Assembly: GCA_051294905.1 (NCBI GenBank)
Contig: CM119383.1
Span: 4,464,001-4,528,000, forward strand
Reading direction: 5' to 3'
DNA: 64,000 bases
DNA from: Botryllus schlosseri
Taxonomy: Eukaryota
The notes beneath the pieces are model-generated. The model was not told the DNA's origin. It saw only the letters and a program-made list of their open reading frames with translations, and made no database searches. How positions within the stretch are numbered: position 1 is the stretch's first letter; every line of letters begins with the position of its first letter. Below, in pieces: positions 43,201 through 63,950 of the stretch. Made by a program: the position numbers and the translations under genes.

Positions 43201-46200
43201 GGAATAATCGCTATAGTTATATTAGATTTATATCAGTTATTATAAATTCTGAGCTATTTACGATGAATTGCGCTATCAAGGGCTGATTGGTAGCCTATAC
43301 GAGTTTTTACAGGGAAAATATGGCGCCCACGACGAATCCCATGCAGTGACTTCGAATTACTACTACCATGACGTCACGAATTCAATGGTGACGTAACAAT
43401 TGATTGACATGTATGGCTATTTGGGCGTCAAAATGGAAAATATAGGGCTAACATGGCTCTTCAGACGAAAAAGGTTCCCGACCACTGCCTATATGTTCAT
43501 TACATCGCATTGTGTCTTATCGCATAGTACATTGTGTGTGTCTTGATCAGATGAAGATATAATATTACGGTTATTGATTACAATCCTTCAATAAAATCCG
43601 CATTCCTATAGGGCGAGCAATCGACGAAAAATCATCACACATCAAGCAGACTTTCGACGGCAAACAGGCAACGTTGATTCTACTCAAAGTATTCACTGAT
43701 GATGAAGGTAAATTTGACAACTACACTACCAAGAAAACGGACCTCACATCCGCATGCGTGAATTCTTCAGGAGAATACTGCTGCCGGGCATTCAACTCGT
43801 GCGGCGCGGCAACCTCTCGCTGCTATCTGCGAGTTGTAGGGACCGAAAGTCCTCCTTCCGCGCCTTGCTGCGTAGAGGCCGTCGAATCGACGCGCGATTA
43901 CGTCACACTGAGCTGGAAATGTCCCGGATATGTTGGACATTTCGGCGGCGCCGCGGTTGAAGGATACTACATAGAGACGTAAGACTCGTGTGACTTTGTC
44001 GCAATCGAGAGCAATGGTCAGTGCCCACTTGCACTGATTAGTGAAGTGGTTATATTTGTGAAGTAGAAATAATGCAGATTCGGGATTGGTTGGCATCACT
44101 TTTTTGTTCCCGAAATAGCCCGAGCAAACATATTTTCGAAAATTGCTCTATTTGTAGTATCGTCAGTCATTGTGCGTTGCCGCGAAGGTATGTCTAGCAA
44201 TGTCGGCAGTAACCCCCCCCCCAAAAAAAAAAAAAAAATCACTACTAAGATCATATGCGACACCTCCGACCTAAATAAATGACTCAAAAACTATTCACTT
44301 GAAATCTTTTCAAACTAATCATTTTACTGCTGCGTGAAGTATGTCTTTGGCTTGTCTTGGATATATATATACTGATGCTTGCATTTGAGTAGCAAGTCAT
44401 GTCATTACTTCGACTTCTAATTGAGTAGAATTTGTTATTACTTAAACCATCTCGGCGAATCAATACTATATTTGCTTACTCGTCTGCAGCTGCGAAGCCG
44501 GTTCCTGTGTCTGGAGGCCGTGGAACAGACAGCCTGTGAAATTGATGAGGTCTCCGGTCACTGGGTTAGAAAAAGGGAAGGTGTATTTTTTCCGGGTGAA
44601 ATCGCTGAACAAATGGGGCGTCAGTCCCCCATCATTGCCCAGCGCGGCAGTGGCATTGCGCGACGCAGGCACCCCAAGACTGCCCGAAGGTGGGTGTGCT
44701 ATCCATGGTGAAAACGATTCGTTTTAAAGACCTTACGTCGGCATTCTAATTAGTCAATTTAAATTGTACTGTTTTTCGTAGAATTTGCCGATCCTTCTAC
44801 TTTGATTCCGCCTGTCATCGAGGAAGAGCCTGAGGTCGAGGGTCAGGAGGAAACAAAAGAACTCCCGGGTTTGTACGATACGTTGATGGATGTATCTAAC
44901 GACTGATTAACAGGGCTGAATCGAGTATTAAGATTCGAGTACACATAAGGAAGGGTTCTTCAAAAGAGGTTTTTTGTCTTCAGTGGCACCCTCTGCAATC
45001 AACGTCACTCCCAATAAATCCGGGAGTGGAATCGTAATTACATGGAAAGGATCTGACACGGACAGCATAGGTATGTCATGTATATCCAACCTTTGGCGGC
45101 GCGCGTTGTTTTAAATACGTCTACATCGTCCGAACCATGGTTCACAATCGAACGGGGATTTCTGTTGTCGTATTTTGATAATATTCCGAAATTTAGATAT
45201 TTTATTCTTAACCGGTACCTTGGAAGGGCGTTCCAGCATTTATGCATCGGTTTGAAATAGATGTCTCTTCTGTAGCGGATGGGTATCTGATAGAATCGAA
45301 GGAAGAAGGTGCCGTCGATTGGAAAACCGAAACGAGTCTGCCTCTGAAAGTAACGGATCCTTATCCAGTAGCGGGGCTCGAACCGGGAAAGACTTATCGG
45401 TTAGTATAATAAACACATGTTGTTAAGGTGCATGATCAGGCCTGCTACTGACGTAGACTTAGAAGGAACGCCGTCCATTTTTCTAAATATTAATTAGAAG
45501 AAGCGGTTTCCGAGACATGTTAAAGGTACGTCAGATGGATGTAGAAAATAATGGGATAAATATTACTGAAGGAAGTAGTCTTAGAAAGTAGATTTGGTTG
45601 ATGGTTCGCATACTTTTAGCATGGCTACTTTGGAAATTCCATGTTGCATCTTTGCGACTAACACACGACTATAATAACAGTATAATGATATTTTCGAGAA
45701 TACATCCATTCAGTGGCCGTGCTACGCGAGCCCCTTCCCCAGTTGTCACGTCAGTTCCACTCACAAAACTGATATAAAGTCAGACATCTCTCATAACTTC
45801 TTTCTACTTGCACAATCCAAAGAGTATACGGTAAGTGGTTTTGCCAATAATAGCTGAGTAGAAGTGGATACAAAGTAAAGTGAATTCATTGCCACTCGAA
45901 GGAGACGTGCAAAGACCAAACCTGCCTGAGTATATTCTGACAATGTAGAAGTACTTAGCTACTGATCACCTCTGATGATAAGCATACCATGGCAGCGATG
46001 CAATGCATTCAATGCACTCTCAACACGACAGATTCCGGGTATTCGCAGTGAACTCCGCCGGCTGTAGTCCCCCGTTGGAGTGCGCTTATTCTGTGACCAT
46101 GAAGGGGAAGGAATCGAGAATCGACGAGCAAATGAATCGTAAGCGACATTCGATTTGTGCTGCAACTATCAGATTCGTGTCTAATCTTTCTTGTAAACCA

Positions 46201-49200
46201 ATACAGAAGAACAGGACATATCAGATTTGGACGCCGTGCAGCAGATGGCGGTAGATGATGCGGATGGTGACCAAGGTTTAAGATTTGTCAATGGCTATAA
46301 AGCAGTGGTTCTCAACCTGGGGGGGGGGGCGTGAAAGCATCTGAGGGGGGGGCGCGAAGAAGCGGTCAGCTAAAAAAAAATTCGCGCTCTGCGCGATTTA
46401 TGTCCAATTCACGCGTGTTACTCTATATATAGACCGATTTTCATATTTTTGAATTCTCTCATCAACAGTCATAACCTTCCATGCCATCTAACAATCTGTT
46501 GGGGATGCTAGCATCCCGGTTGGATTTTGTGATATGACGATAAGGGGGGTGCAAAATTTTTCACTATCATAAAGGGGGGCGTGTCTGGAAAAAGGTTGAG
46601 AACCACTGCTATAAAGCGATTGCTTCGAGGCCAAGATGACAGGAAAATATATATGTCTTAAAGTCACTGGTTCTTAACCTTTGCTAATCTGGCAAACCCT
46701 TACGCTATAATCTGCAAACTTTCGGCGTAGCCCAAATTTTGGCTTGAGTCGCATCATTACTACAGAATACTGATGCACAAAATGAATTGTAGAGCTTCTT
46801 GGAGGTACAGAACTTCAATATACAATTGAATAGTATATTCATATTGAAATAAACCCGAATATTTTCGGCTGACACTCGTCAGGGGTAATCGTCAGCAACT
46901 AGTAGAGAATTGGAAAGAACATCGTATATCAACAATCGTATCAAAAAATATGACGTCACCAGCATGAAATTTCAAACGAGAGAGCGTTCAATGTACTTTT
47001 TTCAGGTGGTATACGAACTCCTTTTGTTGACAGAGTTTGGGTTGGTGTATTTTGATAAAAGTCGACTCCAAGGCACACAAATGGAAGTGTGAACGACCAC
47101 TCCCAATGACGCGAAATCTGTCATCTCGATAATTATTCACACAAATCGGATTATCTAATAGATGTTTGCCGATGGCAGAATTAATGGTCTTTGATCTGTC
47201 AGCATCAAGCTTAAAGGATGAGTTAAGGGTGAGCTTCTCACCGAGCCTGGTGAGCGTGTTCTGATAAATCTGGGGACATGCTGGCTTATACGTTCCTGCA
47301 GACGCTTTGACGACAGATGCCGCGTCGTTGGGAGGGGCCGTTCACACTTCCATTTGTGTGCCTTGCAGTCGACTTTTATCAAAATACACCAACCCAAACT
47401 CTGTCAACAAAAGGAGTTCGTGTACCACCTGAAAATAGTACATTGGACGCTCTCTCGTTTGTAATTTCATGCTGGTGACGTCATATTTTGTGATACGATT
47501 GTTGATATACGATGTTCTTTACAATTCTCTACTAGTTGCTGACGATTACCCCTGACGAGTGAAAGCCGAAAATATTCGGGTTTATTTCAATATGAATATA
47601 CTATTCAAAATGAATTGTACATCCAGGATAGTGTTATAAGTGCAAAACCGCTAAAACATGATTTCTGCACATAACAAGTTTATAATCTATAGATATATAT
47701 AGACTATATTGAATATTTACTGCAAACCAGGATGAGTTCTGCAGTAGGAGTCGAGTATGTGTCTGGAACTCCGCCGAACCTCACAGACTGACTCAATGAA
47801 CCGCTGGAGTTTGTATAAACCCGGATAAGAATCACTGTCTTAAGCGCAGTTAAATGCAACTGTGACTGATTTTGGGGAGCTATAGGTATAAGTGAATAGG
47901 CTGCAGTGTCACAAACAATACGATCCATCTGAATGCTTATAGACCGATGTGACCATAAGTATCGTCAAGCAGATTGATCACCACCCGTATAAAAAATCAC
48001 AATATCAGTAATAAATAGTGCACGTCGCAATTCACCACAGGAAAATGTTTCTGGAATAAATATCTTCTCAATGAAACGCGGTAGAGACATCGTTTGGTGG
48101 TCTCTGTTCAATTCAGCACGATTGGCATACTTTCGATTATATGGAGTAATCGTTTCAGAACTCGGCGTGAACCAACAAATAGAGAAGAGTTCGGAGGAAG
48201 ATACTGTTGAAAAAGTAATGCGTCTGTGTCACGTTTTCTAATCTCGCATCTTAGGAAAATAATCTTTACGTTTTAGAAAGATGTTGGTGAGGATTGCTTA
48301 CCTGCGAAGATAGAAATAAAGGACGAAAAAGTACAGAAAGGCATATTATCTAAAGTTCCTTCTGCTCCTGTCGATGTCGTCGAAATGAAGGTATATTTAT
48401 AGATATCGCAGACACATCTTGAAACTATTTTCCTATCACATGTCAAACCGTAACGCCTGTGTGTAGGCGACGAGAGAATTCATCATGATCGGATGGACAC
48501 CCCCCTTTAAAACGTTCGGACTCGATCCCGCGTATTACGTGGAAATGAGCGAAATTGGCACCAGTGAATGGATGATATGTAACCAGTCGCCGATTGGGTA
48601 ACTTGCTGTCATAAAGCGGTCGAGAGCCTGTTGTGTTCGAATTCTTTCTTAGATTGACTCATTACCCGGTTGTGGGTCTGAAACTCGGATGTTCGTATCG
48701 TTTCCGCGTGCGGGCCGTGACTGAGCACGGTACCAGTTCGTTTTCTGTGCCCAGCGAACCGATCGTTGCGAGTGACGGCATAAGTAAGTAGACTATTTAA
48801 GTGAAAAGAAGTATGTTTGCTTATGGTTTATCTATTCCAACGGTCACCAACCTTTTTGATGGCAAGAGCTACGTATTGGGTACTGATTAATGCGAAGGGC
48901 TGCATTCCGTCCCCCGCTGTCTTCCTTCCGTCTACTCGAGTCAGTTTGAATTTCTTCACTTTGGCATTCAGAGCGCTGGGCAGGGTTTCCGTACCTTACC
49001 ATGTAAATATAATATAACGCTTCCCGAGACTCAAGACTAGCATCTCCGGGTTCAGTTGCGTTGCCACAGAGGGAGCCAAAGCGCCCATATCCCCCACCCT
49101 TTTTCTCGTCGTCGAAAACGAGAGATATTTCTTTCTCTTTTCGTCGAAAACGAGAGAGCCAAGCCCAAACCGCAATGTAAATGGTCCCATCGACGAATCT

Positions 49201-52200
49201 GCCGACAGCGGTCGTAATTTTTCGTAGTTTGCTGATATTCCTCACTTTCAGAACCTCCTAACTGGTGGGGCGGAGTTCAGGGCATATTCAGAGTGGCAGA
49301 CGAAGACGGGAAGCCGTCGGTCACGAGGGACTCGATCAAGGTTTGCTGGGACCCGCCATCCACCGACGGTGGATCTCCTGTCACCGGATACTATTTGGAA
49401 TGGTAACTATGCTCCATTTATCAGTGGAATGTTGTATTTGGCGATAACAGTTTGTAGCCGAATTTCAAACCGTTTGACAACGAAAAGACAGTCATGCTAG
49501 GTATGTAATTCAATTATCGCTGTCAAATGAATTCAAGTTGAAAGGGATGTAATAAAGTGACTTGGAAGAATTCAAAGATTCGAGAATCATGACCCGTCAC
49601 GAATCGTTTCATCAAATATTCGACTAGGATTCGAACCCGCCCCTTAGCATTCTGCTGCGTACACATGTTCAAATCTGGCGTTAATGATGAAATGGTAATG
49701 ATGTAATATCGCGATTAATAGTGGGGTGCTGCCGAGGTCTCACCTAGTGAGAGCACTCTAATATGTTTTGCCTACTACCACTTCTTACTTACTCAAGTAC
49801 TTAACATTTTAGACTACTTCTAATTAACAATTTCCATATTTTAGGCAAAACAAGGTCTAAATCAGAGGTTCCCAACGTAGGCGATTTGGCGGTCTAGGGG
49901 GGCGAAGATGACCAAGGGGGTGATAGGAGGGCGAAAATGGACAAAGGGGGCGAAAATACCGAAGGGGGCGATAGGAGGGCGATGGCGCGTTAAAACGGCT
50001 TAATTGGAGCCAATTCGGAGAAATGACCATTTTTTAGTCAACCCACGAAAATTTAGCTGCAAAATTGTAAAAGTTCGACATTTTTTTTAGTCAACCAACC
50101 GGTAATTACAGTTTGTATGCTCGTTGCTCGGTTCACAAAATTTCTGGGCGATGATCGGTGTGGAGCTCGGAAAGGGGGCGTTGAGCCGAAAAAGGTTGGG
50201 AACCACTGGTCTAAATGGATACTTGTACTTGTGTTTGAGTAAAAATCTACGACATTACTTTTCCTTCAGCGACAACGGTGGCTACTTTTCCATCTCTCCT
50301 CATAATAACTAGTTCAGTACCAACGATGACTATTTTGACCATGTCTATGTATTTCGACAGTACTTTTGCCAGTATCGCATAAGTCTATGAATCCTTGCAT
50401 TCAACTGTAGTCGCCCGGCCGGCGGGAAGTTCAAGCCGGTGAACAACAAGCCACTTAATCAGCGACACTTTACCGTGGACGGCCTCGAGTCGGAGGTAGA
50501 GTATGAATTCAGGATCCGGGCTTGCAACATCGTCGGCAGCGGGGATTGGAAGGTGCTGCCGAAAAGGGTGATGGCCAAAGATCCGGGTTAGTATTATATA
50601 CTCGTGCTTCTATAGGGCTTAGTTATCATGAAGTGGCGGTAACGAAGTGCATCTGCTTTTTCGGAATGGTCAGGTACGCTTCGCTTACTTACACTTACTC
50701 GAGTGGTTTTGTTACTAGACTGTTTCCACTTTCGCTTAGACAGTTTTTAAATCAAAACTAAAATTTTATAATTTGGATTTTAAACCCAAAGTTGCTTTGT
50801 GATAAGTATGCGTTACATTTATGAGGGAAATTGTCATCAAATCTTGTCATATAGGCAGTGTGTTGCGGTAACCGAATGTATTTTGGAAGGTTGCATAAAT
50901 GCATACCTATTTGTAGTGCTAGTTGGTGCTATTTGCGTAGCCGCTGACTACCCCTTAATCAAGTTTGCTTATCTAAACTGGAATGTGGTTGATATTGATG
51001 CTCGGTTGAAATCTTGAGCCTTTGGAATTTTCACAGAGCCACCCAACCCTCCGACTGACGTGCTGCTGACTGAGCTTCATGACGAGTATGTGTGTTTGAG
51101 ATGGAAATCCCCGAAATTCAAGGGAGACGCAGATATGGTGGGGTATATCGTGGAAAGGTACGAATTCCCATTTCGAATAATATTCGGCGGCATTTGTCTC
51201 GGAATGTTATCCGTACGATGTGATTACATCTCTGCAGATTGTATTGAAATTGCGACCTGCTAAGAACCTGCCGAGGTTTTTCATATTTGCACTGTACTCA
51301 CTTACTTACTTAGACTACCCTCACTTCCACCTGACAGTTAGTTAAGAAGTCTAGAATACTGACCTGCGCCGATGGAAGCGCATCGCCAAACATTTTTGGC
51401 AGCAATATATTCATGATATAATACATCTCACAGATGTAAGGAGGGTAGCGACATCTGGATACCGTGCAACAAATTACCCGAAGACGCGCAACACTGCAAG
51501 TACAAAGTAGACGGTCTGATCACCGGTAACGGGCTATAGTTTATCGCTGGCAAAAATCGCATTGGTTGACCATGGATGTTTTGTTGAAGGACAAACGTAT
51601 TTCTTTCGCGTGAGAGCAGTAAACCGCGTCGGAGAAGGCGAGCCGTCTTCTTCGTCATGTTTCGCGACGCCTGGCGAGGATTGGGGTATGGTTAGAATTT
51701 GCTGGAAATATGATTGTTTAATATTTGGTTATGACTTTATCGCAGCGAGTGTGGAGGAACGCCAGAACGCTATGTTGGATAGCAAGAGGAGAAAATTGGA
51801 TGCGGAGCTAGCCATTAAAAGAGCGTTGGAGGAGCAGGAGAGACGCGAAGGTTCCATATCGCTGGTTTATTTAGTTGTGCCAAGTGTTTATCTTTTCCTC
51901 ATTTGGGCTTAACAGCATTCCTGGATGGCATCGTGGACTGCGCAGTGGATCTGGGTGGTAGGGCTTATTTCGAAGCTGTAGTGAAGGACCCCACTACAGA
52001 TGTGAAATGGTGTCTGGGTAACGATAAAGAGGTGAGAATTATGACAGTAATCGCGCGGCCCGGAGCTTCGGCAGAGGCAGTTTTGAAGTTTAATTTATAG
52101 ACACCCGGTAGCCACACGTTTAGTTCACAACTTTTGTCGGTTGAATGTCGGCAAAATTCTAATTTTACGGTGAACTTTCAAGAATCAACATTAGCCGAGG

Positions 52201-55200
52201 ATGTAATTATAAGACATATATGCAATTTGAAGAGCTTGTTGGAGGTACAGAACTTCAATACACAATTGAATAGTATATTCATATTGAAATAAACCCGAAT
52301 ATTTTCGGATGGCACTCGTCAGGGGTAATCGTTAGTAACTAGTAGAGAATTGGAAATATATGCAATTCGAAAACAAATATTAGAAATTTCAATTAAATCA
52401 GATTGAATGCTCTGCTAAGTCCAAAGTAGACCATATACCACGGCACGGTACGGGAAGACAAGGTTCAAAAGCTCTAAATAATGATGTTTTACTTCTCAAA
52501 TTAATGGAAAAGCGCCCCACTTTTTATATTTTGCAATTGAAGTCGTTACCTGTAAAATACCGACAGGAAAGTTGACATGGTATCGGGCCACTTTAGTAAA
52601 ACTTTAGTTTCACACTAAAATATGCGCGTCATTCATGACTTGAAGTTTCAGCACCCTGATAACATTGTTCTGCGACCCTGACATACTATACTACCTTTAG
52701 ATTGATCTTCAACCGGTTAGCAAATACGACATTGTTCACGTTGGAAATAAGAGATCGCTGATCATAACGAACTGCCAATATGAAGATATTCAACTGGTAC
52801 ACTGCATCGCTCTGTACAACGACTGTACAACGTCGGCATGTTGCATTGTGGACGGAGGTACCTATACATCTGATTGACCCTTGAGAATATGGTTACGCAG
52901 CTGAGTTGTTTATTTTCGTTGAGTGGGCAAAATGCGAGATGGAATTTGCGACTCCACGTTGTACAGAGGTGGTTATTGTGGTCAGGGTTTGGTACTCCAG
53001 TAGTAGACGTAGATTTCTACTCAATTATAGGTAAGAGTCGCGTTTTCTAGTACGTGCTGAAATTACTTCAAGGGGATGTAGAAAATGAAAGGCCCGAAAA
53101 GTTCCCGAATATTTAGTTCAAAGAAGTGGGTCGAGGGGTTGCATATAGTTTCAGCAGTTGAATCTTTGCAAATAGATTCAGTTACCCCGATAGAGGAGTT
53201 AATTCATGCGGTTCTTATGACTATTTCAGTGATGATAGTGATAATATTTCGAAACAGTTTTCTTGTTTTAAAAATCCAAATTGTATAAAGTAATTAGTGT
53301 TTCCTAAAAACAGTCCAAGTAGAAGGGGAAGTAGTGTAGAAACATAAGCCCTTGAGTAAATAGTGCAAGCACACAAAACCTTGAGTATTCCGACAAAGTA
53401 GAAGACTTTCGTTACTGAAAACGCCTGATATTATCTTCGTGTGTAATTGAACCATTTTGACTTTATGTATTTTTATTTCTTCACCTTAGTTGTGCCGGTG
53501 GTGTTCGTGGAGCGAGCAGACGATATTTACGTCGATTCCGGAGCGACTGTCGTTTTTCAGTATACTCTCGAAAAAGAAGACGCCAAGGTTAGCTTGTAGT
53601 TCTTTCCATATGACATGAATTCGCGAAACGGTGGTGAGGTGTATTACCAATAAAGTTACGCCACGAACTCACGTAATGTTGACATAAAATGTATTGTGCA
53701 CCCACACCATGATGACAATATAAACTCTTCGACGTTCATCCGAGTTGTTGCGGTCATGGGAGGAATGAAAAGAGCTGTTGCCAAAAATTTGGGCGCTCAA
53801 ACACTGTCGAATAGGTCCAAACTACTGGCTGGGGGGGGGGGGCATAATGATATCGCCTAAACGTACTAAACTACAAGACGCACACGGTTTGAAATAGGCA
53901 ATTCTTCATTGGGCAAATAATCTCGGTGTCTGCTGACGTTTAGAAGTGTTTTGCGGCGCCAATGCGGCGGTGATAAACCGATGTCTGTATTGTTTGTGAA
54001 AGTCGGCCGTCATCATGGAGCGTGTTCAAACCGACTAAGTATAGTTTCTCGTGTCCGTCTCTCAGTGATTCCTATGCTCCACAGGTGACTTGGTATAAAA
54101 ACGGCGTGGAAATCGACGCGGACGACTCTCGATTCGAAATAGTCGCGGAGGGGGGCAAGCGGTCGCTTGCTGTCAAAGACTCCACTGTCGCAGATTCGGC
54201 GGTGTACACGATCAGCGGTTACGGTGGCAGCGACAAATCCCATTTAGTTGTGGACGGAGGTTTGTAGCCACTAGGTTTGCGCACCAAGATTCGAGTGCTC
54301 TAATCCGAAGCTGGTATATAGCAGTGCTTGGATTACTCGAGTCACGATTTTTAGTGACTCTACTTGACTAGAGTAATTTTTTCAAATGCGTAAAATCACT
54401 CGACTCAACTCGACTCGAGTCAATTTGTGCGTTGACTCAACTTGTACTCGAGTCATTGTGCATGACTCGAACCAAGTCATATGACTGGAGACTGAGGACA
54501 ACCAAGATAGACATTTCGTTGCAACTCCTAAAAATAGTAAAGTCTCCACATCATTGGTATTTCGTCTATCAGGCCTGATACTTGGAAAATAGGGCCTGAA
54601 ACTGTTAAGACTGAGGAAAATTACCATATTATGAATGCAAGCCATTCTATATCACCCGAGTAGAGTTAAAAAAGTGGGTTGAACCGGATGGAACTGAAAA
54701 ACTGAACAGTGACCATGATGACTTGGAATCGGACTTGAGCCAAACCGCTACGACTCGGACTAGACCCTCTACTAGCTGACTTGGACTTGGACTTGACTCG
54801 GTTGTGAATTCAAAATGACTAGACTTGACTCGAGTCTAAACTATAAAAGTGACTCGGAACCTTGTGACCTGGTTACAACCCTGGTATAAACTGCAATTAT
54901 TCCAGTCCAGTATAGGATAGTATAACAGGCCTATATAGTGACATTTTTTCGGGTAATACGTCGCCATCATCAGGTGCTCATTGCCACGAGAATGATATTA
55001 TCAATTAACAACATAGTTTCGGCACTTTTATTTCCCCAGCGGAATCCTTGAAACCTCTGTTGGTCCTATCGCGACATCCCAAAGATATAGTAAACAGCTA
55101 CAACCACAATCTTACGTTATTGGAAATGAAATTTCTGATCTATACCGACAGCATTGACCCTCACAAAGTTTAATGAAATAGGCATGGTTGAAATAATACT

Positions 55201-58200
55201 ATTTATCTTTCCGTAGAGTAGAACTGGCTTTATATTCTTTGTGTTCACATGAAGGTACGTATTTGAACAGTTCACATCATTCATACTCTCGACTCGACTC
55301 TGAGCCTACTACACTGGAATCACTCTGGTACTCGATATTCCGCATTAGTCACAGTAAAGAACTCTTATAAATTACATCATGCATAACTCCTATCAACGGT
55401 TTCAGTTCGTCCCGCCTATTTCTCGAACTCGATACACGGAGGGGAGTACGCCCACGACGAGGGCGTGGCTGAAATTGAATGCTCCGTCGTTCCTTCGGAT
55501 CTGTACGGGGACGGGGAACAGCCCGAATGTATTTGGTAGGATTTGTGGTGTTCTTTCGGAAAAATAATGTCGCGTTCGAATGGAAGTTCTGACTTGGCGG
55601 GTACGTGAATTGAGCCGCGCCAAACCTTTTTAGAATGGTGACTATGAAAGGGCTGCCACGTTCGTGAGACTGTTCAAGTCAATAGGCTATCAGGCCTAAA
55701 GCTCTCTATATAGTGCTGCAAGCCAACGACTGCTCCATTTGAACGCTTTTTCTCAATTGTCGCCAATCTACTTAGACAGTTGTAACCAAAAATTATTGGA
55801 AATTACTAAAATTTTACCTTTTTGTGCAAATGAAAGATTTTTTACAAGTGAAAAATGTAAATTTTCAATTTTCTGGTCAAACTTATTCATTTTTATTCAA
55901 GGAACACTCGGTCTACTGACAATCCATCGTTGGGTATAAGCATTTTACTTTAATACACTATACTATTGCTTATATCTGTTCTATTTGCCGCGGATTGAAA
56001 TCAAAACAATTAGCTTTTAACTTGTTATTAAATATAGTAAACCCGATGATAAGCCTTGGCTTAAGCTTGTGTCATAGTATCGAGCGGCGATTTATTTGTT
56101 CAAGACTACCGTGCATTACAAGCGTCATCACTACAAATCTTGTAGGTTTAATCTAAGAAATAGTAAGTTGCGTTATTTTCTATTAGGTCGTTCGTACCTG
56201 TATAAGTGTACTATGTATATGTTCGTTCTCGTTGTGAGCAATTTGTCCGCATGTCGTGACGCGCACAAGCGTTGTATAAACGATTTTCAGGTATCACAAC
56301 GGAGACCGACTGGAAGCGGGAGACGAGAAATACGAGATAATTATCGAAGGAAACCGAAGAGTTCTGAAGGTGATGAAATGATATTAAGGTTTGCAGGGTA
56401 CGGTAAAATGACAGATTATCACCAGCAGAAACTATTGTTATAGCGCTCGGTTTGTTGCACTTCCGATAAGGGTACCGCACGCTTTTTGTCAGGCTGTAAC
56501 GTTAGTCTTTTTTTGAAGATCTTGAATTTGAATCACGAAGACAGCGGCGAAATCGTATGCAGATGTGGCGGGGACGAGAAGAGATGCGAGATCGAAGTTG
56601 AAAGTAAGTGGCGCCTGAAATTAGCGACCTCTGTTATCGTCATTGCGCAACATAGGATCTCAAAAGTGAATTATTAGTTCCTCGTATACCACGATTTACG
56701 TTACTGCAATATTGACTGTATTACTCGACTCGAATCAGGTTTAAGTACTCAAAACATTCCGCCCAGATCATACTATAATTATCACCATTCATCACTAATT
56801 GATATCTAAGATACGCGTGAACCCAAATCACATGTCGTAATTCAAGCCATCTGCAGCGCGCCTTATCTCTTGCAGGACCTCCGCCACCTCCCCCGAAGCT
56901 ACCGGAGTTGCACCAGGAAGATGCCGGTGAGGATCTTTACCGGTTGTTACATATATTCTCTCAACTTTATCAACTATTTGTAACTTAATGACATTACAGG
57001 AATATATTCCTGTGTTAAGTACGAGTTTGGTAAATTGTTCTGGCACAGAGATGAAGTTTATTAAACTTACTATGCGACAAAGTATAACTGAAATTCAAGT
57101 AGCAGTAGCGTAAATTTATTCTCAAGTGCAAGTATAGAAGTTCCGATTTTACAGTAATTAAGATATATGTATTTTAGGTTTAGAACTCAGAGCTGAAGTA
57201 GAATTAGTCTAAAATCATACTCAGACGAAGTAGCCCAAGCAGAGGCAAAACCTATTTCAGTACTGCGGCAAAGTTGATGTAGGCCCTACACTTCGTCACT
57301 GACGAGACGACCTCTGTGAAATACACGGTAAGTAGTTGAACACGAGAACGCAACACCCAACATCTTAAATAGACAGAGTACGTACCGACTGCTCTGTATA
57401 AGGCGAGCGAGTATAATCAACCGAAAACAACAAAGTAACGATGGAAACTAAAAATAACGACGCAGTACACTTACTGACAATATATTGGCAGCGATCAACT
57501 TCGTGCAAGGTCTGCGGTCGGAAGCGCTCACCGGCAGCATGCGCTTGTACTGCGTGTTGGAGAAGTTACGCGAGGACGTGAAGATCATTTGGTACAAGGA
57601 CGACGTCGAGCTTGACGTGAACGGGAAAGAGTGGAAGGTAAGACGACGCGTTGTTTGCCGCCTTTTGGGTAAAAGTCAAGTTGTACCCGCGGATTTTCAA
57701 TGTTGCAATTATCCGTTTGCGGACGAATATATTAATAACAAAGCTGGTCAACGCAGTCAGCGTTGGTACTCGGGTAGAAACAGAAGTCACGCCGTGAATT
57801 TATACTTTATTCCAAGTGTAGAAGTAGCAATTCAAAGATGTGTCCAAGGAACTCCAAGTGGAGGTTGGAAATAAAATCTGTACTCAATTATGTTTGGTCG
57901 ACGGGTCGCATCTTTAGCAGTTAATCGGAGGTGGCCAATTACGAAATTGCAGGGTGCGCCTTCTCGGCGACCTGAAGATGACAAATCACAGTAATACAAA
58001 TAGGTGCGATTTCCGAAATAAAGTCAGTTACCGTGATACACCGGCTATTTGGCCAGTTGTCATGTCAATTACACTGATATAAGTGGTGTTAGCATTACGG
58101 CTGTTAAAAAATGACATTTTTATTCAAATTGTCCTGGCTACTTGATGAAATTGTTAGGTGTTGGTGCAATTCTAACCGATAGAGGCATTGCTGCATTGTG

Positions 58201-61200
58201 TCTATTTATTTAAAATAGATATCAAAATTTCACTGGCTTCCCCATGAAATTGTTATCTTATCCGAAAATAAGGTTGAAAATCATATTTGGCTCAAGTCCA
58301 ACCCGTACAAGCAAAGTTATTGGAGTACAAAATTTTGTATTTGGAAAAAATAGTATTTACTGTGGCAAATTCTTTAATTATTTATTATAAGTAGGGCAAG
58401 TTTTTGTTGCACTAAAATCGCGAGAAAGTTGCACTAATAATTTTTGTTGAATTAGTAGGGTATGAGACGATCTAAAGGTTCTGTTATATAACCCAGTTCC
58501 TGCAGAGCTGTCATATTTGTTACTTTGCCATTTCACGAACATCCTGGCCAGACCGCCAAAATGATATTTTCCCCGGTTCGCAGCAAGAAAATTACGAAAT
58601 GTTGGAATAATTTCCGCCAAAAAATCCAAACAGCATAGCGATAACCCTCTCCCCCTGAAACAAGTCAAATAACTCACGCCAAACCCCTAAGGTCTGCAAA
58701 CTTAACCCAAGGCGTTGCGGGAAAATTCATTCTTGACGACATTAACAAAATCAATAACCTGAATAAGGTGACCCAGTGAAAATGTAATTTTCGGTAGTCT
58801 CGCCTGGGCCTTCGTGAAATCGGAAACTATCTCAAATTCAAATGGGAAACTATCTCAAATTCAAACGACAGAATTAACAAAGTAATATATTTACGTAATG
58901 TTCGGACACGGTCGTACTTGGAACGGGTAGTTGAAGTTCTTGCTTGCTAGGCATTTGGTCACAGATAACAGATGCACCTAATCCATCATATAGCTCTTTG
59001 TTATGCAAATCAAAGAGAATAGAACCATTATAGAAATAGTTCATAGCATGTTTTTAAATCACTTCTTTACGTTTTGACGCAATATTTGATAAAAGTTGCA
59101 GTAAAAATTGGTATGAAAAATGGAGAAAAGTTGATCATCAATAACTTTGTTTCTACTGGTTCGAATCGAATCAAATTTGTTGTGCATCATTTTTTCACAC
59201 AATCCAACATTTTAATGGGGTAGCCAGTAAAATTTGAAAACATTTCATGTTTATTTTTATTAAATAAATCCAAAACTTTTTCTCGTATACCATTGCCACT
59301 GTAAGTTGGAATTGATCCAAGACTCGTGTGCAGCGTTTTTTTAGGTTACCTAACAATCTTATCAAGTAGCCGGTAATATTTATAAAAGAAAGGTATTTTT
59401 GAACAGCCCCAGTAAACATATCAGGAAACTAAGTTTCTACTTTACAAAATCACATTAGTAAGTATTCGGTATTCGGTAGAGGTGAAAGTAATCTAAAACG
59501 TAACCACTACTTTGGTAAGCGGTACAAGTAAGCGAAACCTAATTGAGTACTCGGAAAAAGTACTTCGTTACTGACCACATCTGCGTAGCAACATCCGTGT
59601 GCTTTTTGTGTTGCAGTGTCTGATAGATCGCGAGAGTGGTCTCGTGTCTCTACTCTTTCGGGAACCTACTGCGGAGATGGCGGCCGCGACCTACACTTGC
59701 GAGTTCATCACGAGTCATTCCATCTTTGACACGAAAGTCAACTTCACTTTTGCCGCCGGCGGTAAGTTGAGCTATCAAGTGTTAGTGCTGATTGGCGCGC
59801 AGTTCCGGTCTTTCGTACTCTGCATATAATACTGATTACTAGTCTGCTCACGAGATAACTGTATAACCTTATCTGACATCTACTTCTACGCCAGTTCATT
59901 TTCATCGCATGCCCTTTTCATCTTATCTTCTAATACTCTTCCTTCTAGGGTTGCATTTTAAACAAAAATCAATTTCAAACAAACATGTTTAAAACAAGGC
60001 CCTCGTTTGAAACATGTTTTTTTAAACCATGACGTCAGGAATGTTCAATTGTGACGTCATAAAGGATTGACATTGACAATTGAAAATATGGGGTAAATAT
60101 AGCTCCTTTGACGAAATATCTGTACTGTTGCTATAGAACCGAGTATTTTGAGGGTTCCAACCATCCCATATCGATAAACTTCGGCTATATCGGGTGGTAA
60201 TTGTCCGTAGGCTCATACAACATGTTTTTGGAAAGTATTTACATAATTATGTCATTATTTTACAACTTGAAAAAAAACACAATTTTTGAAGGTATTTGTT
60301 TAAAAAGGCCGTTTGTTATAAATACAACCCTACTTCTTTCAGAGTTCAGACTATACATGCCTCTTATTTATAAATATGAATACATGATCTAACTAAGCCA
60401 ACGTGAGAGATTGATTGAGAGACTGCTCCAAGTCGTTTGGTCTCCTTCCAACATTTTCGTTATATCATAATCTAGTGGTGTTTTGAAATGATAAAATTAA
60501 TAATGAACTGAACTAATCGGTATCATCGCGAGATACGTAAAATTTCTCTCGGCCTTCGTTCGGATTCGATCGATTAAAACTTCGTGACCATCCGGTAGAT
60601 GTCACTGATGAGTAACAATGCAACACTGCTCAAAAGCGAATTCAATCCCGACTAATCAAGGTTTTGATGGAGTATTTCGTTGATGACTTTGCGCTTTCAA
60701 TCGATTTTAGGAACTCATTATCTACAACTTCCATCTTCCAATATTTCCCATAATGCATGTTCTTTTTGTACGCGGGGTGCTGTCGGGTTTATTCGCTCCA
60801 ATCCGTGTCGATTATCAGTTACAATTATTCGAGTCGACTTTTTCAGGTAACGAAAATAGATGCTTTCACTCCAAGCGTAATAGTTTTATTTTGCCCTGCC
60901 ATCATTGAAATATCGCGATTGTCGGGTCAAACTTACTCAGTAATATACTGGTGATTCGATGAGCACGCAGACGTAACTATTTCCATACTTTTCCGACGGC
61001 AGAATTCGAGAAAGTTTCCAAGGAGGCGGAGAAGCTGCAAGAACAGGAGGACAAGGAAAGGCGAGAGCGTCTGGAGGACAGAAGGCGGAAGAGGGCGGAG
61101 TTGAGAAAAAAGAGGGAAGAAGAAGAGAAGAGGAAACGCAAAACGACACCGGTATATAAATATGATTTTCAAAATCGGCTTTACGCGTACATCTCACTTT

Positions 61201-62415
61201 TTGTAAACCGAGCGTGAGACTTCGCAACGCGAGAATAGTCGAAATGGTCGGGAACGAAGTCCAGCGATTTGTAAAATAACCTTATAGTTTGAGATCTGTT
61301 TTTTTCGATCTATACTTCATGTCATGCTTGCTTCACTTGAACTGTAACCTACGCTTGTCCTTCGGATATTATATATATACCTTTATATATATACCTTTAA
61401 CTTAATTTTTGGCGATGTTCATAATTATAGTTTTCACTGAAAGCAAAAACCCTGTATCCTTATGGGGATGTAGCGTAATGGTGGAGTGTCCGGCTTCGTG
61501 ATCTGTAGGTCATGGGCTAGATCCCCCGCCCGGCCAGACCAAAGACCTGAACAGTAACACTGGTATTCATGGCTTCCCAGCTTGGCGCTCAGCATTACCG
61601 GGATAGCACGGAGGGGTGCTGCCAGACTTAAAAAGCCTTAAAAGACTGTCTCTGCACCTTTCTTGCCACAGATCGTGTGTATGTATATCATACTGAGCAC
61701 ATCACATCATGGGATATATCTCCATAAGGGTTTGTGTGTTTAAATGGTTTTTAGCAGTTGGAATGGGTGTGGAAAGGTGTATGTTTTCACTATGACACGA
61801 TGCAACCGCTATGTATAATGCTAATGGAGTATCCTCAGTGACGTTTATGCCATTTTTTGTGGTGGCGGACTGATTATATTGGGTACAGTGTGACACTGCT
61901 GTGAAGCAATGGTTCAGTTGTTTCCAAATGAAGAAAAGAAAACATGACGGCACGCAGTCATATTGAAAACTCGGAAAATTAGCATACCTCATCAATCATG
62001 ACGATAAATGTGAGGTGAAAATTTATCAGGACAAAATCAGCTAGTGTATTCGAGCTCTATATTCGATTGAGTTGGCTTCCGCTGGTCGGATCATGATTTT
62101 GGAAAGCACTGGCAATATCACGTCTGTTCCATATTGAAATTGACAGCCGTAGACTATATACTAAGCAAAACACGTAGACAAAAACGTCTGGTCGTCATTA
62201 TAGATTATTGCCAAACCAATCGAAACGTGACCCAAAGTTATTTTTCTCAGACTGCTGTTAACGAGGCGCGTAAACAGGACGAATGTAAGTATAGAGTTAG
62301 TCTAAAATTCTTCGAAAACCTTCCAGTATACACGTTGCCGCACCTTGTTGCAGTGACGTGCGACGGCATCGCGCACGGCGTCGACAGGACCGGCCAAATC
62401 GTGCTTACGTCACAG
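31273..62415 (+). CDS. MYOM: Myomesin-like M-band protein: unique head, 2 Ig, 5 Fn3, then extra Ig domains and helices; 3' end beyond the window
   Basis: 41 phase-consistent GT-AG exons (5022 nt, 1674 codons): 31273-31373, 31647-31758, 32077-32183, 32334-32496, 34651-34895, 35853-35981, 36595-36724, 37456-37607, 37853-38040, 40800-40916, 43612-43707, 43771-43978, 44490-44689, 44782-44868, 44984-45070, 45276-45399, 46032-46138, 46207-46275, 48159-48214, 48277-48390, 48467-48597, 48653-48783, 49252-49402, 50411-50586, 51037-51157, 51434-51525, 51590-51685, 51746-51850, 51916-52031, 52701-52857, 53490-53587, 54085-54259, 55406-55535, 56291-56369, 56519-56603, 56876-56926, 57492-57637, 59617-59761, 61003-61151, 62251-62284, 62354-62415. 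RAPMFEMKIRSHVVWEKMNVKFTCTVRGTPTPTVTWYK...PGKYKI...GLHTLEINR matches myomesin My2 (human MYOM2 RAPEILVRLRSHTVWERM...PGKYRI...GVHTLEINR, recalled). The first exon is the least certain; an alternative start MSLV lies at 31684. Confidence 0.88.
33115..33415. mobile_element. Older hAT (Buster-type) MITE
   Basis: TIR cagtggttctcaaac / gtttgagaagcactg; TSD not preserved. Confidence 0.7.
33526..34383 (-). mobile_element. Deleted hAT-like DNA transposon retaining a transposase C-terminal remnant, copy 2
   Basis: ORF 33775-34068 contains CCLPTTVVVEPSFSILGKLLNKDIHFLPENVGKY, resembling the hAT dimerisation motif P-T-S-x-x-x-E-R-S-F-S. Ends aggcgattttttga / tcaaaaaatcgccct. Confidence 0.7.
36773..37040. 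mobile_element. hAT MITE (TAGGGTTGCATTT family), diverged
   Basis: tagggttgcattt ... tatacaacccta; body similar to 29298-29741. Confidence 0.6.
38911..39476 (+). CDS. Candidate alternative (probably terminal) exon of the myomesin-like gene
   Basis: Strong acceptor cgcttttcag at 38910, in the phase 1 needed after exon 37853-38040. Open for 188 codons to TAA, with exon-like GC content. The main isoform splices cleanly from 38040 to 40800 without it. Confidence 0.6.
41921..42794. mobile_element. hAT (Buster/Charlie-type) non-autonomous element
   Basis: Perfect 15-bp TIR caggggtgggcaaac; perfect TSD atctagct. Confidence 0.93.
46303..46608. mobile_element. hAT (Buster/Charlie-type) MITE
   Basis: Perfect 15-bp TIR cagtggttctcaacc; perfect TSD ctataaag. 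Confidence 0.93.
46853..46886 (-). ncRNA. Minimal type I hammerhead ribozyme motif
   Basis: ACCC-CUGACGA-GUGUCAGCC-GAAA-AUAU-UC/GGGU: intact core, 4-bp helix I, palindromic AAUAUU helix III. Confidence 0.72.
47548..47581 (+). ncRNA. Minimal type I hammerhead ribozyme motif
   Basis: ACCC-CUGACGA-GUGAAAGCC-GAAA-AUAU-UC/GGGU. Confidence 0.72.
49863..50208. mobile_element. hAT (Buster/Charlie-type) MITE with G-rich internal repeats
   Basis: TIR cagaggttcccaac / gttgggaaccactg; perfect TSD gtctaaat. Confidence 0.9.
52228..52355 (-). mobile_element. Solo 128-bp Penelope terminal-repeat insertion
   Basis: Matches 46792-46920; perfect 12-bp TSD atatatgcaatt (52216-52227 and 52356-52367). Confidence 0.85.
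52293..52326 (-). ncRNA. Minimal type I hammerhead ribozyme motif
   Basis: ACCC-CUGACGA-GUGCCAUCC-GAAA-AUAU-UC/GGGU. Confidence 0.7.
54322..54883. mobile_element. hAT MITE with GACTC subterminal repeats, copy 1
   Basis: Collinear with 62944-63488; TSD gtatatag/gtataaac (6/8). Confidence 0.75.
59946..60332. mobile_element. hAT MITE (TAGGGTTGCATTT family)
   Basis: tagggttgcattt / aaatacaacccta; TSD cttccttc/cttctttc (7/8). Confidence 0.78.
61464..61700 (+). mobile_element. tRNA-derived SINE (family B) with a MetaSINE-like central domain
   Basis: A-box tagcgtaatggtggag, degenerate B-box gggctagatccc, then ccagaccaaagacc...tggtattcatggcttcccagcttggcgctcagcatt. 3' boundary approximate. Confidence 0.72.
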
Positions 62416-62943
62416 GTGAGATAAGGATCTGTTGGACGCCGGCATCGTTGGGAATTTTTAGATGGACTTCGTCCAGACCGTTGCTCGATAGGTCACGACG
62501 CGTCACGCGTACGTTTTTCGGAACTGATATTTGGGAAGCGTATCCGGACTGCGTGACGAGAATGCGAGAATGCTATCACGTCTGTTGCAGACTTGGACAG
62601 CTAGATAATTCTAATTGTCTCATTACACCTATTAGAGCGAAATATCGGTAATCTAATTATAACCTTATTCCTGGTCCTGAAAATGCTGCTGTAGAACTGG
62701 ACAGTGCGAAACGAGCCAAGCTTGTCGTATACATCCGTTGTTATTCTTTTTCGTATAAGAATGAACTATGGTTTGATATCAACTGAACTTTTTGTAATTC
62801 ATTGCAATTCGGAATAGCTCAATTTCCAAGTTATTACGAATTCAGTAATTCTAATTCTAATATAATTCGAAAAAGCTGAGCTTTCTCTAGTGGTCTAGCT
62901 CTGGTCCATCAGCCTTGTGCTATATGTTTCGAATGCTATGATC

Positions 62944-63488
62944 CAGGATTGTAACGGCTCGAGTCACGATTATTTTGGTGACTCGGGTGATTGTTTCAAA
63001 TGCGTCAAATGACTCGACTCGACTAGAGTCAATTTGTGTATTGATTCGACTGGTACTCCAGTCAGTGTGCATGACTCGAACCAAGTCGTATGACTCGAGA
63101 CTATAGGTCGGCCACGACAGATGTTTTATTGTAACTTTCAAGAATTTTATTTCGTCTATCAGTCCTGATACTTGGAAAATAAGGCCAGAAACTGCGTCAG
63201 GACTGAGAAAAATTACGATTATATGAATGTAAGCCATTCTATATCAATCGAGCAGAGTTGAAAAAGGTGGGTTGAACCGGATTGAACTCAAAACTGAACA
63301 GTGAACACAATGACTTGGACTTGTACTCGAATCACAAGACTATGACTCGGACTCGACCCTCTACTCACTGACTTGGACTTGGACTTGATTCGGTGGTGAA
63401 TTGAAAATGACTCGACTTGGCTTGAGTCAAAACTATAAAAGTTAGATTGACTTGTGACTCGGAACCTTGTGATTTGGTTACAACTCTG
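62944..63488. mobile_element. hAT MITE with GACTC subterminal repeats, copy 2
   Basis: TIR caggattgtaac / gttacaactctg; perfect TSD ctatgatc. Confidence 0.85.
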
Positions 63489-63950
63489 CTATGATCAAGG
63501 CACTACGGGGTGAGGAGAAAATATCGAAACGGCGATTCTTCTCGTTGATAAAATATTTCTCTCTGGTAAATATTGCGTATAATTTCGTTATTCGAAAAGA
63601 TTGCCTCTTACTACTTCATTCTGTTTCGAGTACCTGAATCTTTCCCAGCCCTAGTGCTTACCAGTGCTCCGCGAAAAATGAATTTCCTAAGCATAACAAC
63701 AGAGGCTTAACCAGGCCTGATATATACCTGGTTCGGGAGCTGATGATTTTGACCGGACTTGATCGTGTAAAGCTGTTTCTGGGACCGGCTTTGTGACGAA
63801 TCCTATATCATAAATTGGGATTCGATTTGGCCGACTCTGGTACACAAAACATGTAAATGCTTCAATTGCTCTAATGTTATACACATTTATGACATTTTAA
63901 GCGCTATATAAACAGAAAAAGACAAATCAATACGTTTGTTCAGGTGTCTG

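What the first reader, a model, noticed from the sequence alone, without database searches (positions are those of the whole stretch)
51746..62415. Myomesin with a non-vertebrate C-terminal architecture: four extra Ig domains and two charged helices before the My9-like domain
Seen: after the fifth Fn3, the frame continues into a charged helix (EERQNAMLDSKRRKLDAELAIKRALEEQERRE). Three Ig domains of MyBP-C/obscurin style follow (e.g. VTWYKNGVEI...RFEIVAEGGKRSLAVKDSTVADSAVY), then a myomesin-type Ig ending FTFAAGEFEKVSKEAE and a long ER/K helix. Only after these comes GIAHGVDRTGQIVL. Known (recalled): in human MYOM2, My8 is followed directly by My9 (EISAGVDEQGNIYL), and LIGDAFKTVLEEAE is a later inter-domain helix. 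Inference: a longer M-band linker of likely more than 2000 aa. It may be a lineage-specific expansion or an ancestral hybrid linking the myomesin and MyBP-C families.
Basis: partly seen in the sequence, partly recalled or inferred. Interest (0 to 1): 0.72.

Follow-up and report, generated by a model that had tools for sequence, protein, structure and literature searches.

The report
Lancelet-type myomesin gene, C-terminal half
This is the tail half of a single-copy myomesin-like muscle gene that most likely has the usual five Ig domains after its five Fn3 domains, not nine, but joins them in a different way from vertebrates, including one long charged spring-like helix.

Summary
They lie in exons bounded by AG/GT sites and join in phase. 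My model from the helix exon at 51746 to a stop codon reads without stops for 660 aa.

Assembled contigs from two public runs, probably RNA, confirm three points. The ER/K helix exon runs 61003-61151. It joins 61151|62251, and the next join is 62415|64107. One 2,681-nt contig continues through two more exons of the same Ig domain and a helix exon.

Only one Ig domain follows the ER/K helix. After it come a 33-residue helix and an acidic tail. I found no further Ig-like exon in the next 48 kb.

The layout is therefore head, 2 Ig, 5 Fn3, 5 Ig. That is the canonical myomesin count (PMC8900313), so "four extra Ig domains" is not supported. The protein is about 1,940 aa by an unconfirmed N-terminal model.

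The linkers do differ from vertebrates:
- A helix precedes the first C-terminal Ig.
- Ig-a to Ig-d have no linkers between them.
- A 46-residue ER/K helix separates Ig-d from Ig-e.

By sequence, Ig-a and Ig-b resemble MyBP-C and obscurin Ig domains. The first half of Ig-d matches human My11.

A lancelet myomesin gene is already reported (PMC7023976).

The parts
32093..51685 (+). N-terminal part of the same gene: head, Ig, a roughly 175-aa Ser/Asp-rich insert exon, Ig, and five Fn3 domains. The Fn3-5 exons are 51037-51157, 51434-51525 and 51590-51685.
   Evidence: Partial I-set and fn3 matches on the exons. Codon-usage and splice-site chain model of 25 exons, about 1,284 aa. The start codon and several junctions are not confirmed.
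51746..51850 (+). Helix-1 exon, 105 nt, phase 1 at both ends. It encodes 35 aa, half of them charged, with no Pro or Gly. It links Fn3-5 to Ig-a.
   Evidence: AG/GT bounded and flanked by introns of 60 and 65 nt. Composition. No RNA confirmation.
51916..52857 (+). Ig-a, two exons: 51916-52031 and 52701-52857.
   Evidence: Splice sites. Weak PDB matches of both halves to slow-type MyBP-C 2yuv (E 0.24 and 0.041) and to obscurin 2e7b (E 0.16). No myomesin match at E <= 10.
53490..54259 (+). Ig-b, two exons: 53490-53587 and 54085-54259. It follows Ig-a with no linker.
   Evidence: Pfam I-set E 1.1e-7. Best PDB match is cardiac MyBP-C residues 395-437, also matched as the separately solved C2 domain 1pd6 (8g4l_bo E 7.8e-17), then titin and slow MyBP-C. 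No myomesin match at E <= 0.1. Only a self match in the genome.
55406..56603 (+). Ig-c, three exons: 55406-55535, 56291-56369 and 56519-56603. No linker on either side.
   Evidence: Splice sites and frame. Matches the profile built from the gene's own Ig domains, which is circular. No PDB match for its first exon.
57492..59761 (+). Ig-d, two exons: 57492-57637 and 59617-59761. It ends FTFAAG and runs directly into a helix.
   Evidence: The first exon matches My11 of human myomesin-1 in 3rbs_A, 2y25_A and 2y23_A, and also matches 4v10_A (E 0.002-0.008, about 35% identity). The second exon has no PDB match. Only a self match in the genome. The acceptor at 57492 is weak and unconfirmed.
61003..61151 (+). 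Hel2 exon: a 50-aa ER/K-rich linker, 70% E+K+R, with 20 opposite-charge pairs at i/i+4.
   Evidence: Contig piece on 61002-61150 and a GT..AG joint to 62251 in two runs. AlphaFold2 gives one helix over residues 2-47, pLDDT 94. Composition.
62251..62415 (+). First exon of Ig-e: 23 aa of linker, then the start of the domain with GIAHGVDRTGQIVL. The gene continues beyond the window. In window-equivalent coordinates the remaining exons are Ig-e 64107-64220 and 65782-65872, helix Hel3 66002-66138, and a candidate last exon 68808-68897 with the stop. On the genome these are G000:C13:4528107-4528220, 4529782-4529872, 4530002-4530138 and 4532808-4532897.
   Evidence: Joints 61151|62251 and 62415|64107. 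A 2,681-nt contig holds Ig-e exons 2-3 and Hel3 and then leaves the genome at the GTGAGG donor at 66139. I-set match on exon 2, E 0.008. Hel3 folds as a helix over residues 2-34, pLDDT about 84. The tail exon is inferred.

Best explanation
This is the C-terminal half of the single myomesin orthologue of an invertebrate chordate. The 19 large sequence pieces and the 495-Mb genome fit a lancelet.

The protein is about 1,940 aa and has the canonical myomesin module count: a unique head, 2 Ig, 5 Fn3 and 5 Ig.

The linkers differ from vertebrates. A 35-aa charged helix joins Fn3-5 to Ig-a. Ig-a, b, c and d abut with no linker. Ig-d is followed by a 46-residue ER/K helix within a linker of about 73 aa. 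Ig-e is followed by a 33-residue helix and an acidic, Ser-rich tail.

By analogy with vertebrate myomesin, the protein would cross-link thick filaments at the M-band. Extensibility would come mainly from one long ER/K helix at the position of the My12-My13 linker, rather than from four short Ig-helix modules. M-band location, dimerisation through the last Ig domain and spring behaviour are inferred, not shown.
For: - Domain order and count: partial I-set and fn3 matches exon by exon, and a stop-free 660-aa joined C-terminal model.
- Myomesin kinship: the first exon of Ig-d matches My11 of human myomesin-1 in three of its four matching chains. The first half of Fn3-1 matches myomesin-1 chains 5fm5_M, 5fm4_A and 6zva_B, although titin scores higher.
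- Published background: all myomesins have a head, 2 Ig, 5 Fn and 5 Ig (PMC8900313). The lancelet genome has one myomesin gene (PMC7023976).
- Single copy: two exons tested against the genome found only themselves.
- Transcript evidence: exon 61003-61151 and the joints 61151|62251 and 62415|64107. One contig runs from Ig-e through Hel3. Raw RNA reads from run X12 lie on the bins holding Ig-e exon 3 and Hel3, with none in the next 400 nt of intron. Run X1 holds 10% of the sampled words of 51500-61499, against a predicted exon share of about 15%.
- No further Ig exon in 48 kb downstream: own-domain profile, motif and visual scans, codon-usage scan and Pfam on the ten largest frames.
- Helices: AlphaFold2 on Hel2 and Hel3.
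- Spring analogy: single alpha-helix domains behave as constant-force springs and have been likened to the My12-My13 linker (PMC4183817).
Against: - The contig that carries Hel3 continues for 2,273 nt that I could not place. A divergent Ig domain split into small exons could hide there. My half-domain searches are weak: they missed the second halves of both N-terminal Ig domains of this gene.
- The candidate last exon rests on three indirect points: a 3-nt overhang (GTG) in the contig alignment, its codon score and its acidic composition.
- Ig-e is followed by a helix. In vertebrates that is true of My9-My12 but not of the last domain, My13.
- The best myomesin match of the fourth Ig domain is My11, the third in humans, so a one-to-one positional correspondence is not shown.
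- No RNA evidence links Fn3-5 to helix-1 or Ig-a through Ig-d.
- The organism was not identified by any tool.
Confidence: 0.68

Rival explanations
1. Ig-a to Ig-d are extra domains, the GIAHGVD domain is My9, and My10-My13 follow downstream. That gives nine C-terminal Ig domains and more than 2,000 aa.
For: The transcript does continue past Hel3 for 2,273 nt that I could not place. Ig-e is followed by a helix, as My9-My12 are (PMC3279516).
Against: Four more Ig-helix modules need about 1.4 kb of coding sequence in eight or more exons. None appears in 48 kb downstream by profile, motif, codon-usage or Pfam scans, and introns in the modelled C-terminal part are at most 2.7 kb. Every AG|GTG acceptor in the next 24 kb opens a frame of 29 codons or fewer. 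None of the domain's exons matched a human myomesin chain; two gave no PDB match at all and the third only generic Ig matches.
Confidence: 0.07
2. Six C-terminal Ig domains. One more divergent, My13-like Ig domain lies in small undetected exons after Hel3. Then Ig-d would correspond to My11, Ig-e to My12, and one of Ig-a to Ig-c would be additional.
For: The first exon of Ig-d matches My11 specifically. Ig-e plus Hel3 looks like an Ig-helix module. The remaining 2,273 nt of contig leaves room for about 300 nt of coding sequence. My exon-level searches have low sensitivity.
Against: Between 66.2 and 81 kb the only + strand frame with exon-like codon usage is the acidic tail exon, which ends in a stop. 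Its composition continues that of the end of Hel3. An extension after the last Ig domain is known from chicken heart myomesin, about 90 aa (PMC8900313).
Confidence: 0.17
3. Two adjacent genes: a head-Ig-Fn3 gene that ends near 51.7 kb, and a separate Ig-helix gene.
For: No RNA junction was obtained between 51.7 and 60.9 kb.
Against: The strand is the same throughout. All domain-boundary junctions are phase 1 and compatible. Introns of 60 and 65 nt flank helix-1. There is no stop in the joined frame, and Ig-a begins at a phase-1 acceptor rather than at a start codon. The contig that carries the helix exon at 61003-61151 (1,065 nt) extends at least 336 nt on each side of it.
Confidence: 0.04

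Closest known systems
Vertebrate myomesin family (MYOM1, MYOM2/M-protein, MYOM3)
   Same: Unique head, then 2 Ig, 5 Fn3 and 5 Ig in that order (PMC8900313). Ig domains that run directly into an exposed alpha-helix. Sequence match of Ig-d to My11. A long helix before the last Ig domain, at the position of the six-turn My12-My13 linker.
   Different: Only Ig-d and Ig-e are followed by helices, whereas My9-My12 all are (PMC3279516). Ig-a to Ig-d abut directly. The Ig-d to Ig-e helix has 46 residues and ER/K composition, against about 20 residues in vertebrates. There is an extra helix between Fn3-5 and Ig-a, and a helix plus acidic tail after the last Ig domain. A roughly 175-aa insert lies between the two N-terminal Ig domains, whereas the vertebrate EH segment is recalled to lie between My6 and My7.
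Myosin-binding protein C (Ig domain C2) and obscurin or titin I-set Ig domains
   Same: The exons of Ig-a and Ig-b find these as their best solved relatives. They are tandem Ig domains without linkers.
   Different: The overall order is not that of MyBP-C, which as recalled runs C0-C5 Ig, two Fn3, Ig, Fn3, Ig. There is no MyBP-C motif. The similarity is at the level of generic sarcomeric I-set domains, and for Ig-a the E-values are only 0.04-0.24.
ER/K single alpha-helix (SAH) domains, for example in myosin 10
   Same: Hel2 is 70% E+K+R, with dense i/i+4 opposite charges and few hydrophobic residues. It is confidently predicted as one helix. [quoted passage not shown]
   Different: Hel2 is shorter than the SAH domains that have been studied. 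Its stability as a monomeric helix was not measured, and it sits between two Ig domains.

Membership tests
Myomesin family | Domain order: unique N-terminal head, 2 Ig, 5 Fn3, 5 Ig (PMC8900313) | tested here: met
   Exon-wise I-set and fn3 matches and joined models. The count of five C-terminal Ig domains depends on the inferred 3' end.
Myomesin family | Sequence similarity to known myomesin domains above that to other sarcomeric Ig/Fn3 proteins | tested here: inconclusive
   The first exon of Ig-d matches My11 (E 0.002-0.008), ahead of all but one titin chain. The first half of Fn3-1 matches myomesin-1 but titin scores higher. Ig-a and Ig-b match MyBP-C, obscurin or titin instead. Ig-c and Ig-e find no specific match: no hit for three of the four exons searched and only generic Ig matches for the fourth. 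Whole domains could not be searched because no reference exists for spliced sequence.
Myomesin family | Ig-helix (IgH) modules: each of the first four C-terminal Ig domains is followed by an exposed alpha-helix (PMC3279516) | tested here: not met
   Only Ig-d and Ig-e are followed by predicted helices. Ig-a, Ig-b and Ig-c are each followed directly by the next Ig domain. This feature was defined on human myomesin-1 and may not be ancestral.
Myomesin family | Antiparallel dimerisation through the last Ig domain, and M-band location | not testable with these tools
   No spliced reference sequence was available for a complex prediction. There are no localisation data.
Myomesin family | Single orthologue in the lancelet genome (PMC7023976) | tested here: inconclusive
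   Two exons have only self matches in the genome, which fits a single copy. The 19 large pieces and 495 Mb fit Branchiostoma (my own knowledge).
MyBP-C family | Domain order C0-C10 with Fn3 at C6, C7 and C9, and the M-motif (recalled) | tested here: not met
   Here five consecutive Fn3 domains are flanked by 2 and 5 Ig domains.
ER/K single alpha-helix | Long E/K/R-rich helix with i/i+4 salt-bridge pattern and no hydrophobic seam | tested here: met
   Hel2: 70% E+K+R, 10% hydrophobic, 20 i/i+4 opposite-charge pairs in 50 aa. AlphaFold2 gives a helix over residues 2-47, pLDDT 94. Monomeric stability was not measured.

The most novel reading that the evidence does not exclude
The lancelet protein keeps an older state of the myomesin tail. 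Three MyBP-C/obscurin-like Ig domains are joined rigidly, and a single long ER/K spring sits before the terminal Ig domain. On this reading the vertebrate array of four short Ig-helix springs arose later, by helices spreading between all the domains. That would date the origin of the M-band 'IgH spring' to after the split from cephalochordates and would tie the myomesin tail to the MyBP-C/obscurin Ig lineage.
Probability: 0.25. Interest if true: 0.55.

Novelty: new variant of a known kind. Interest (0 to 1): 0.33.

Why it matters
Myomesin's elastic C-terminal Ig-helix array is the textbook example of a helix-unfolding spring in muscle. It was described as unique to this protein (PMC3279516).

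An early-branching chordate orthologue with the same domain count but a different linker plan offers a natural comparison. It could show which helices matter for M-band elasticity and how the array evolved. It also offers a compact ER/K helix between two Ig domains for single-molecule pulling experiments.

The main result, though, is a correction. The gene is an ordinary member of the family in domain count, not a nine-Ig hybrid.

Tried and rejected
- Full-length orthologue search. A search of 1.84 billion representative proteins with the 214-aa exon 38832-39473 gave only three exon-sized fragments.
- Word-indexed protein searches. The Ig-b exon and the Ig-e/Hel3 frame found nothing. The My3/Fn3-1 exon found one 94-aa unnamed fragment. 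So no vertebrate myomesin, MyBP-C or obscurin sequences entered the session, and a per-domain phylogeny was not possible.
- Whole-domain searches and folds. Pfam, PDB and fold searches on whole spliced domains were left out, because spliced sequences have no reference and I did not type long sequences.
- Exon-level PDB searches. Four found nothing at E <= 10: Ig-d exon 2, Ig-e exons 1 and 2, and Ig-c exon 1. Ig-e exon 3 plus Hel3 gave only generic Ig matches.
- First 3' end reading. I first read the stop at 66148 as the C-terminus. I rejected this because the contig leaves the genome at the GTGAGG donor at 66139.
- First Ig-e acceptor. I first placed the acceptor of Ig-e exon 1 at 62354. I rejected this because the RNA joint is at 62251.
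- Low-penalty chain model. A splice and codon chain model with a low exon penalty produced many spurious small exons. I used the stricter run.
- Earlier notes of the scan. They gave nothing beyond this finding's own entry and a note on Penelope repeats.


Full report
WHAT IS THERE

The window is G000:C13:4464001-4528000, + strand, of a 495.5-Mb assembly. From about 32 kb onward the + strand carries a long series of short open frames with Ig and Fn3 character.

GENE MODEL OF THE C-TERMINAL PART

I enumerated donor and acceptor pairs that keep the frame and read the DNA at each junction. The resulting exons are:
- Fn3-5: 51037-51157, 51434-51525, 51590-51685
- helix-1: 51746-51850
- Ig-a: 51916-52031, 52701-52857
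- Ig-b: 53490-53587, 54085-54259
- Ig-c: 55406-55535, 56291-56369, 56519-56603
- Ig-d: 57492-57637, 59617-59761
- Hel2: 61003-61151
- Ig-e: 62251-62415, 64107-64220, 65782-65872
- Hel3: 66002-66138
- candidate last exon: 68808-68897

Coordinates above 64000 continue the window numbering. The DNA came from the same contig.

All domain-boundary introns are phase 1. The joined sequence from helix-1 to the stop reads without stops for 660 aa. Pfam matches on single exons are partial but fall in the right order.

A chain model based on codon usage and splice sites gives about 1,284 aa for the upstream part: head, Ig, a roughly 175-aa insert, Ig and five Fn3. The total is then about 1,940 aa. The start codon is uncertain.

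RNA EVIDENCE

I had one reads call of 6 kb and used it on 60951-66950 (L008). Assembled contigs of two 2015 runs are probably RNA, but that is the tool's guess. They show the following:
- A piece lies on 61002-61150, which is the Hel2 exon.
- GT..AG joints lie at 61151|62251 and 62415|64107.
- One 2,681-nt contig carries 60 nt of Ig-e exon 1, then exon 2, then 90 nt that fit exon 3, then Hel3 up to 66141. It then continues for 2,273 nt that do not lie on this stretch.

A 2026 raw-read RNA run (X12) has a few reads in the bins that hold Ig-e exon 3 and Hel3. It has none in the 400 nt of intron that follow.

These data gave two corrections:
- Ig-e exon 1 starts at 62251, so the Hel2 to Ig-e junction is phase 0.
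- The in-frame stop at 66148 is not used. The transcript is spliced at the GTGAGG donor at 66139.

WHERE THE GENE ENDS

The Hel3 piece overruns the donor by three bases, GTG. The next exon should therefore begin GTG and not GTGA.

Twelve AG|GTG sites occur in the next 24 kb, eleven of them not followed by A. All open frames of 29 codons or fewer. The longest, at 68808, encodes an acidic, Ser-rich peptide that continues the composition of the end of Hel3 and ends in a stop.

I trained a codon-usage score on this gene's exons. Between 66.2 and 81 kb that exon is the only + strand frame scoring in the range of the known small exons.

Several other scans found nothing Ig-like up to 114 kb:
- a profile built from the five Ig domains
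- motif scans
- visual reading of all frames of 24 aa or more between 66.1 and 78 kb
- Pfam on the ten largest downstream frames

These scans are weak for half domains. The profile missed the second halves of both N-terminal Ig domains of this gene. I therefore put the probability that Ig-e is the last Ig domain at about three in four.

With Ig-e last, the layout is head, 2 Ig, 5 Fn3 and 5 Ig. That is the layout shared by all myomesins (PMC8900313). The 'four extra' domains plus the 'My9-like' one are the five C-terminal Ig domains.

The My9 label has no support. None of the exons of Ig-e matched a human myomesin chain, including My9: two gave no PDB match at E <= 10 and the third gave only generic Ig matches. 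The V-D-x-x-G pattern it rests on also occurs in Ig-a and Ig-b.

The five domains are 16-30% identical to each other, so no recent tandem duplication is involved. The two exons I tested against the whole genome are single copy.

WHAT REALLY DIFFERS FROM VERTEBRATES

In human myomesin-1 each of My9 to My12 is followed by a helix of four to six turns, the 'IgH' module (PMC3279516). The arrangement here is different:
- Ig-a, Ig-b, Ig-c and Ig-d follow one another with no linker.
- A 35-aa charged helix exon sits between Fn3-5 and Ig-a.
- Ig-d runs into a 50-aa ER/K segment that is 70% E+K+R and has 20 opposite-charge pairs at i/i+4. AlphaFold2 without an alignment predicts one helix over residues 2-47 at pLDDT 94. 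With the 23 residues that follow, the Ig-d to Ig-e linker is about 73 aa.
- Ig-e is followed by a predicted 33-residue helix and a disordered acidic end.

An extension after the last Ig domain is not without precedent. The chicken heart isoform has about 90 aa after My13 (PMC8900313).

DOMAIN KINSHIP

Only exon-sized queries could be sent.
- The first exon of Ig-d matches My11 of human myomesin-1 in three independent constructs, and also chain 4v10_A, whose domain range I did not establish. E is 0.002-0.008 and identity is about 35%, with a B-C loop of the same length and charge pattern.
- The second exon of Ig-b matches cardiac MyBP-C residues 395-437, a region also matched as the separately solved C2 domain (1pd6). 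Slow MyBP-C and titin follow, with no myomesin match at E <= 0.1.
- Both exons of Ig-a weakly match slow MyBP-C 2yuv, and the first also matches obscurin.

The correspondence of Ig-a to Ig-e with My9 to My13 is not settled. The fourth domain resembles the human third, which leaves room for one gain and one loss, or for a sixth domain I did not detect.

HOW IT PROBABLY WORKS

This section is inference from the vertebrate family. The head and the Fn3 part would bind myosin and partner proteins. The C-terminal Ig domains would span toward the M-line. The last Ig domain would pair with that of a second molecule.

Single alpha-helix domains unfold at low, nearly constant force and refold quickly. 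They have been likened to the My12-My13 linker (PMC4183817). Hel2 sits at exactly that position, so it is the likely main elastic element. Ig-a to Ig-d would form a stiffer rod.

None of this was tested here.

NOVELTY

A review already states that the lancelet genome has one myomesin gene (PMC7023976). I found no paper in the library describing its domain or linker layout.

The gene is therefore a known kind with canonical domain count. The linker plan is an undescribed variant of moderate interest.

Noticed in passing
window 38911-39435: A large exon of about 175 aa, rich in Ser, Asp and Lys, lies between the two N-terminal Ig domains. It has no Pfam match and the highest coding score in the locus. 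Fragments 51-56% identical exist in other public assemblies (P0001, P0002). No full-length protein containing it was found. It may be an alternative exon, as the vertebrate EH segment is, though at a different position.
   Followed up: partly
window 51686-51745 and 51851-51915: The introns flanking the helix-1 exon are very short, 60 and 65 nt. The first is a multiple of three and has no in-frame stop, so retaining it would insert 20 hydrophobic residues. The helix-1 exon is phase 1 at both ends and could be skipped without a frameshift.
   Followed up: no
window 46889-47089, and again at window-equivalent 69634-69747 (L003:5634-5747): Two copies of a repeat share an open frame beginning SSATSRE. 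The first lies inside the stretch that another first-stage note (s1-236847) calls Penelope terminal repeats with hammerhead ribozymes. The second would lie in the putative 3' UTR of this gene.
   Followed up: no
window 63401-63490: A repeat of about 90 nt has at least 40 copies at 88-97% identity spread over many contigs of the genome. It looks like a short interspersed element.
   Followed up: no
window 61400-61750, 62550-63550, 63950-64150, 64750-65150, 65550-65750, 66550-66950 (L008 bins): Intronic stretches show very high summed contig depth in the two probable RNA runs, up to about 52,000, and also some raw RNA reads. Many reads have loose ends. These look like transcribed repeats, not exons of this gene.
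   Followed up: no
window-equivalent 107-113 kb (L007): Long open frames, up to 409 aa, have reverse-transcriptase and integrase-like sequence features. This is probably a retrotransposon about 40 kb downstream of the gene. A frame resembling a membrane protein lies at about 104.9-105.1 kb.
   Followed up: no
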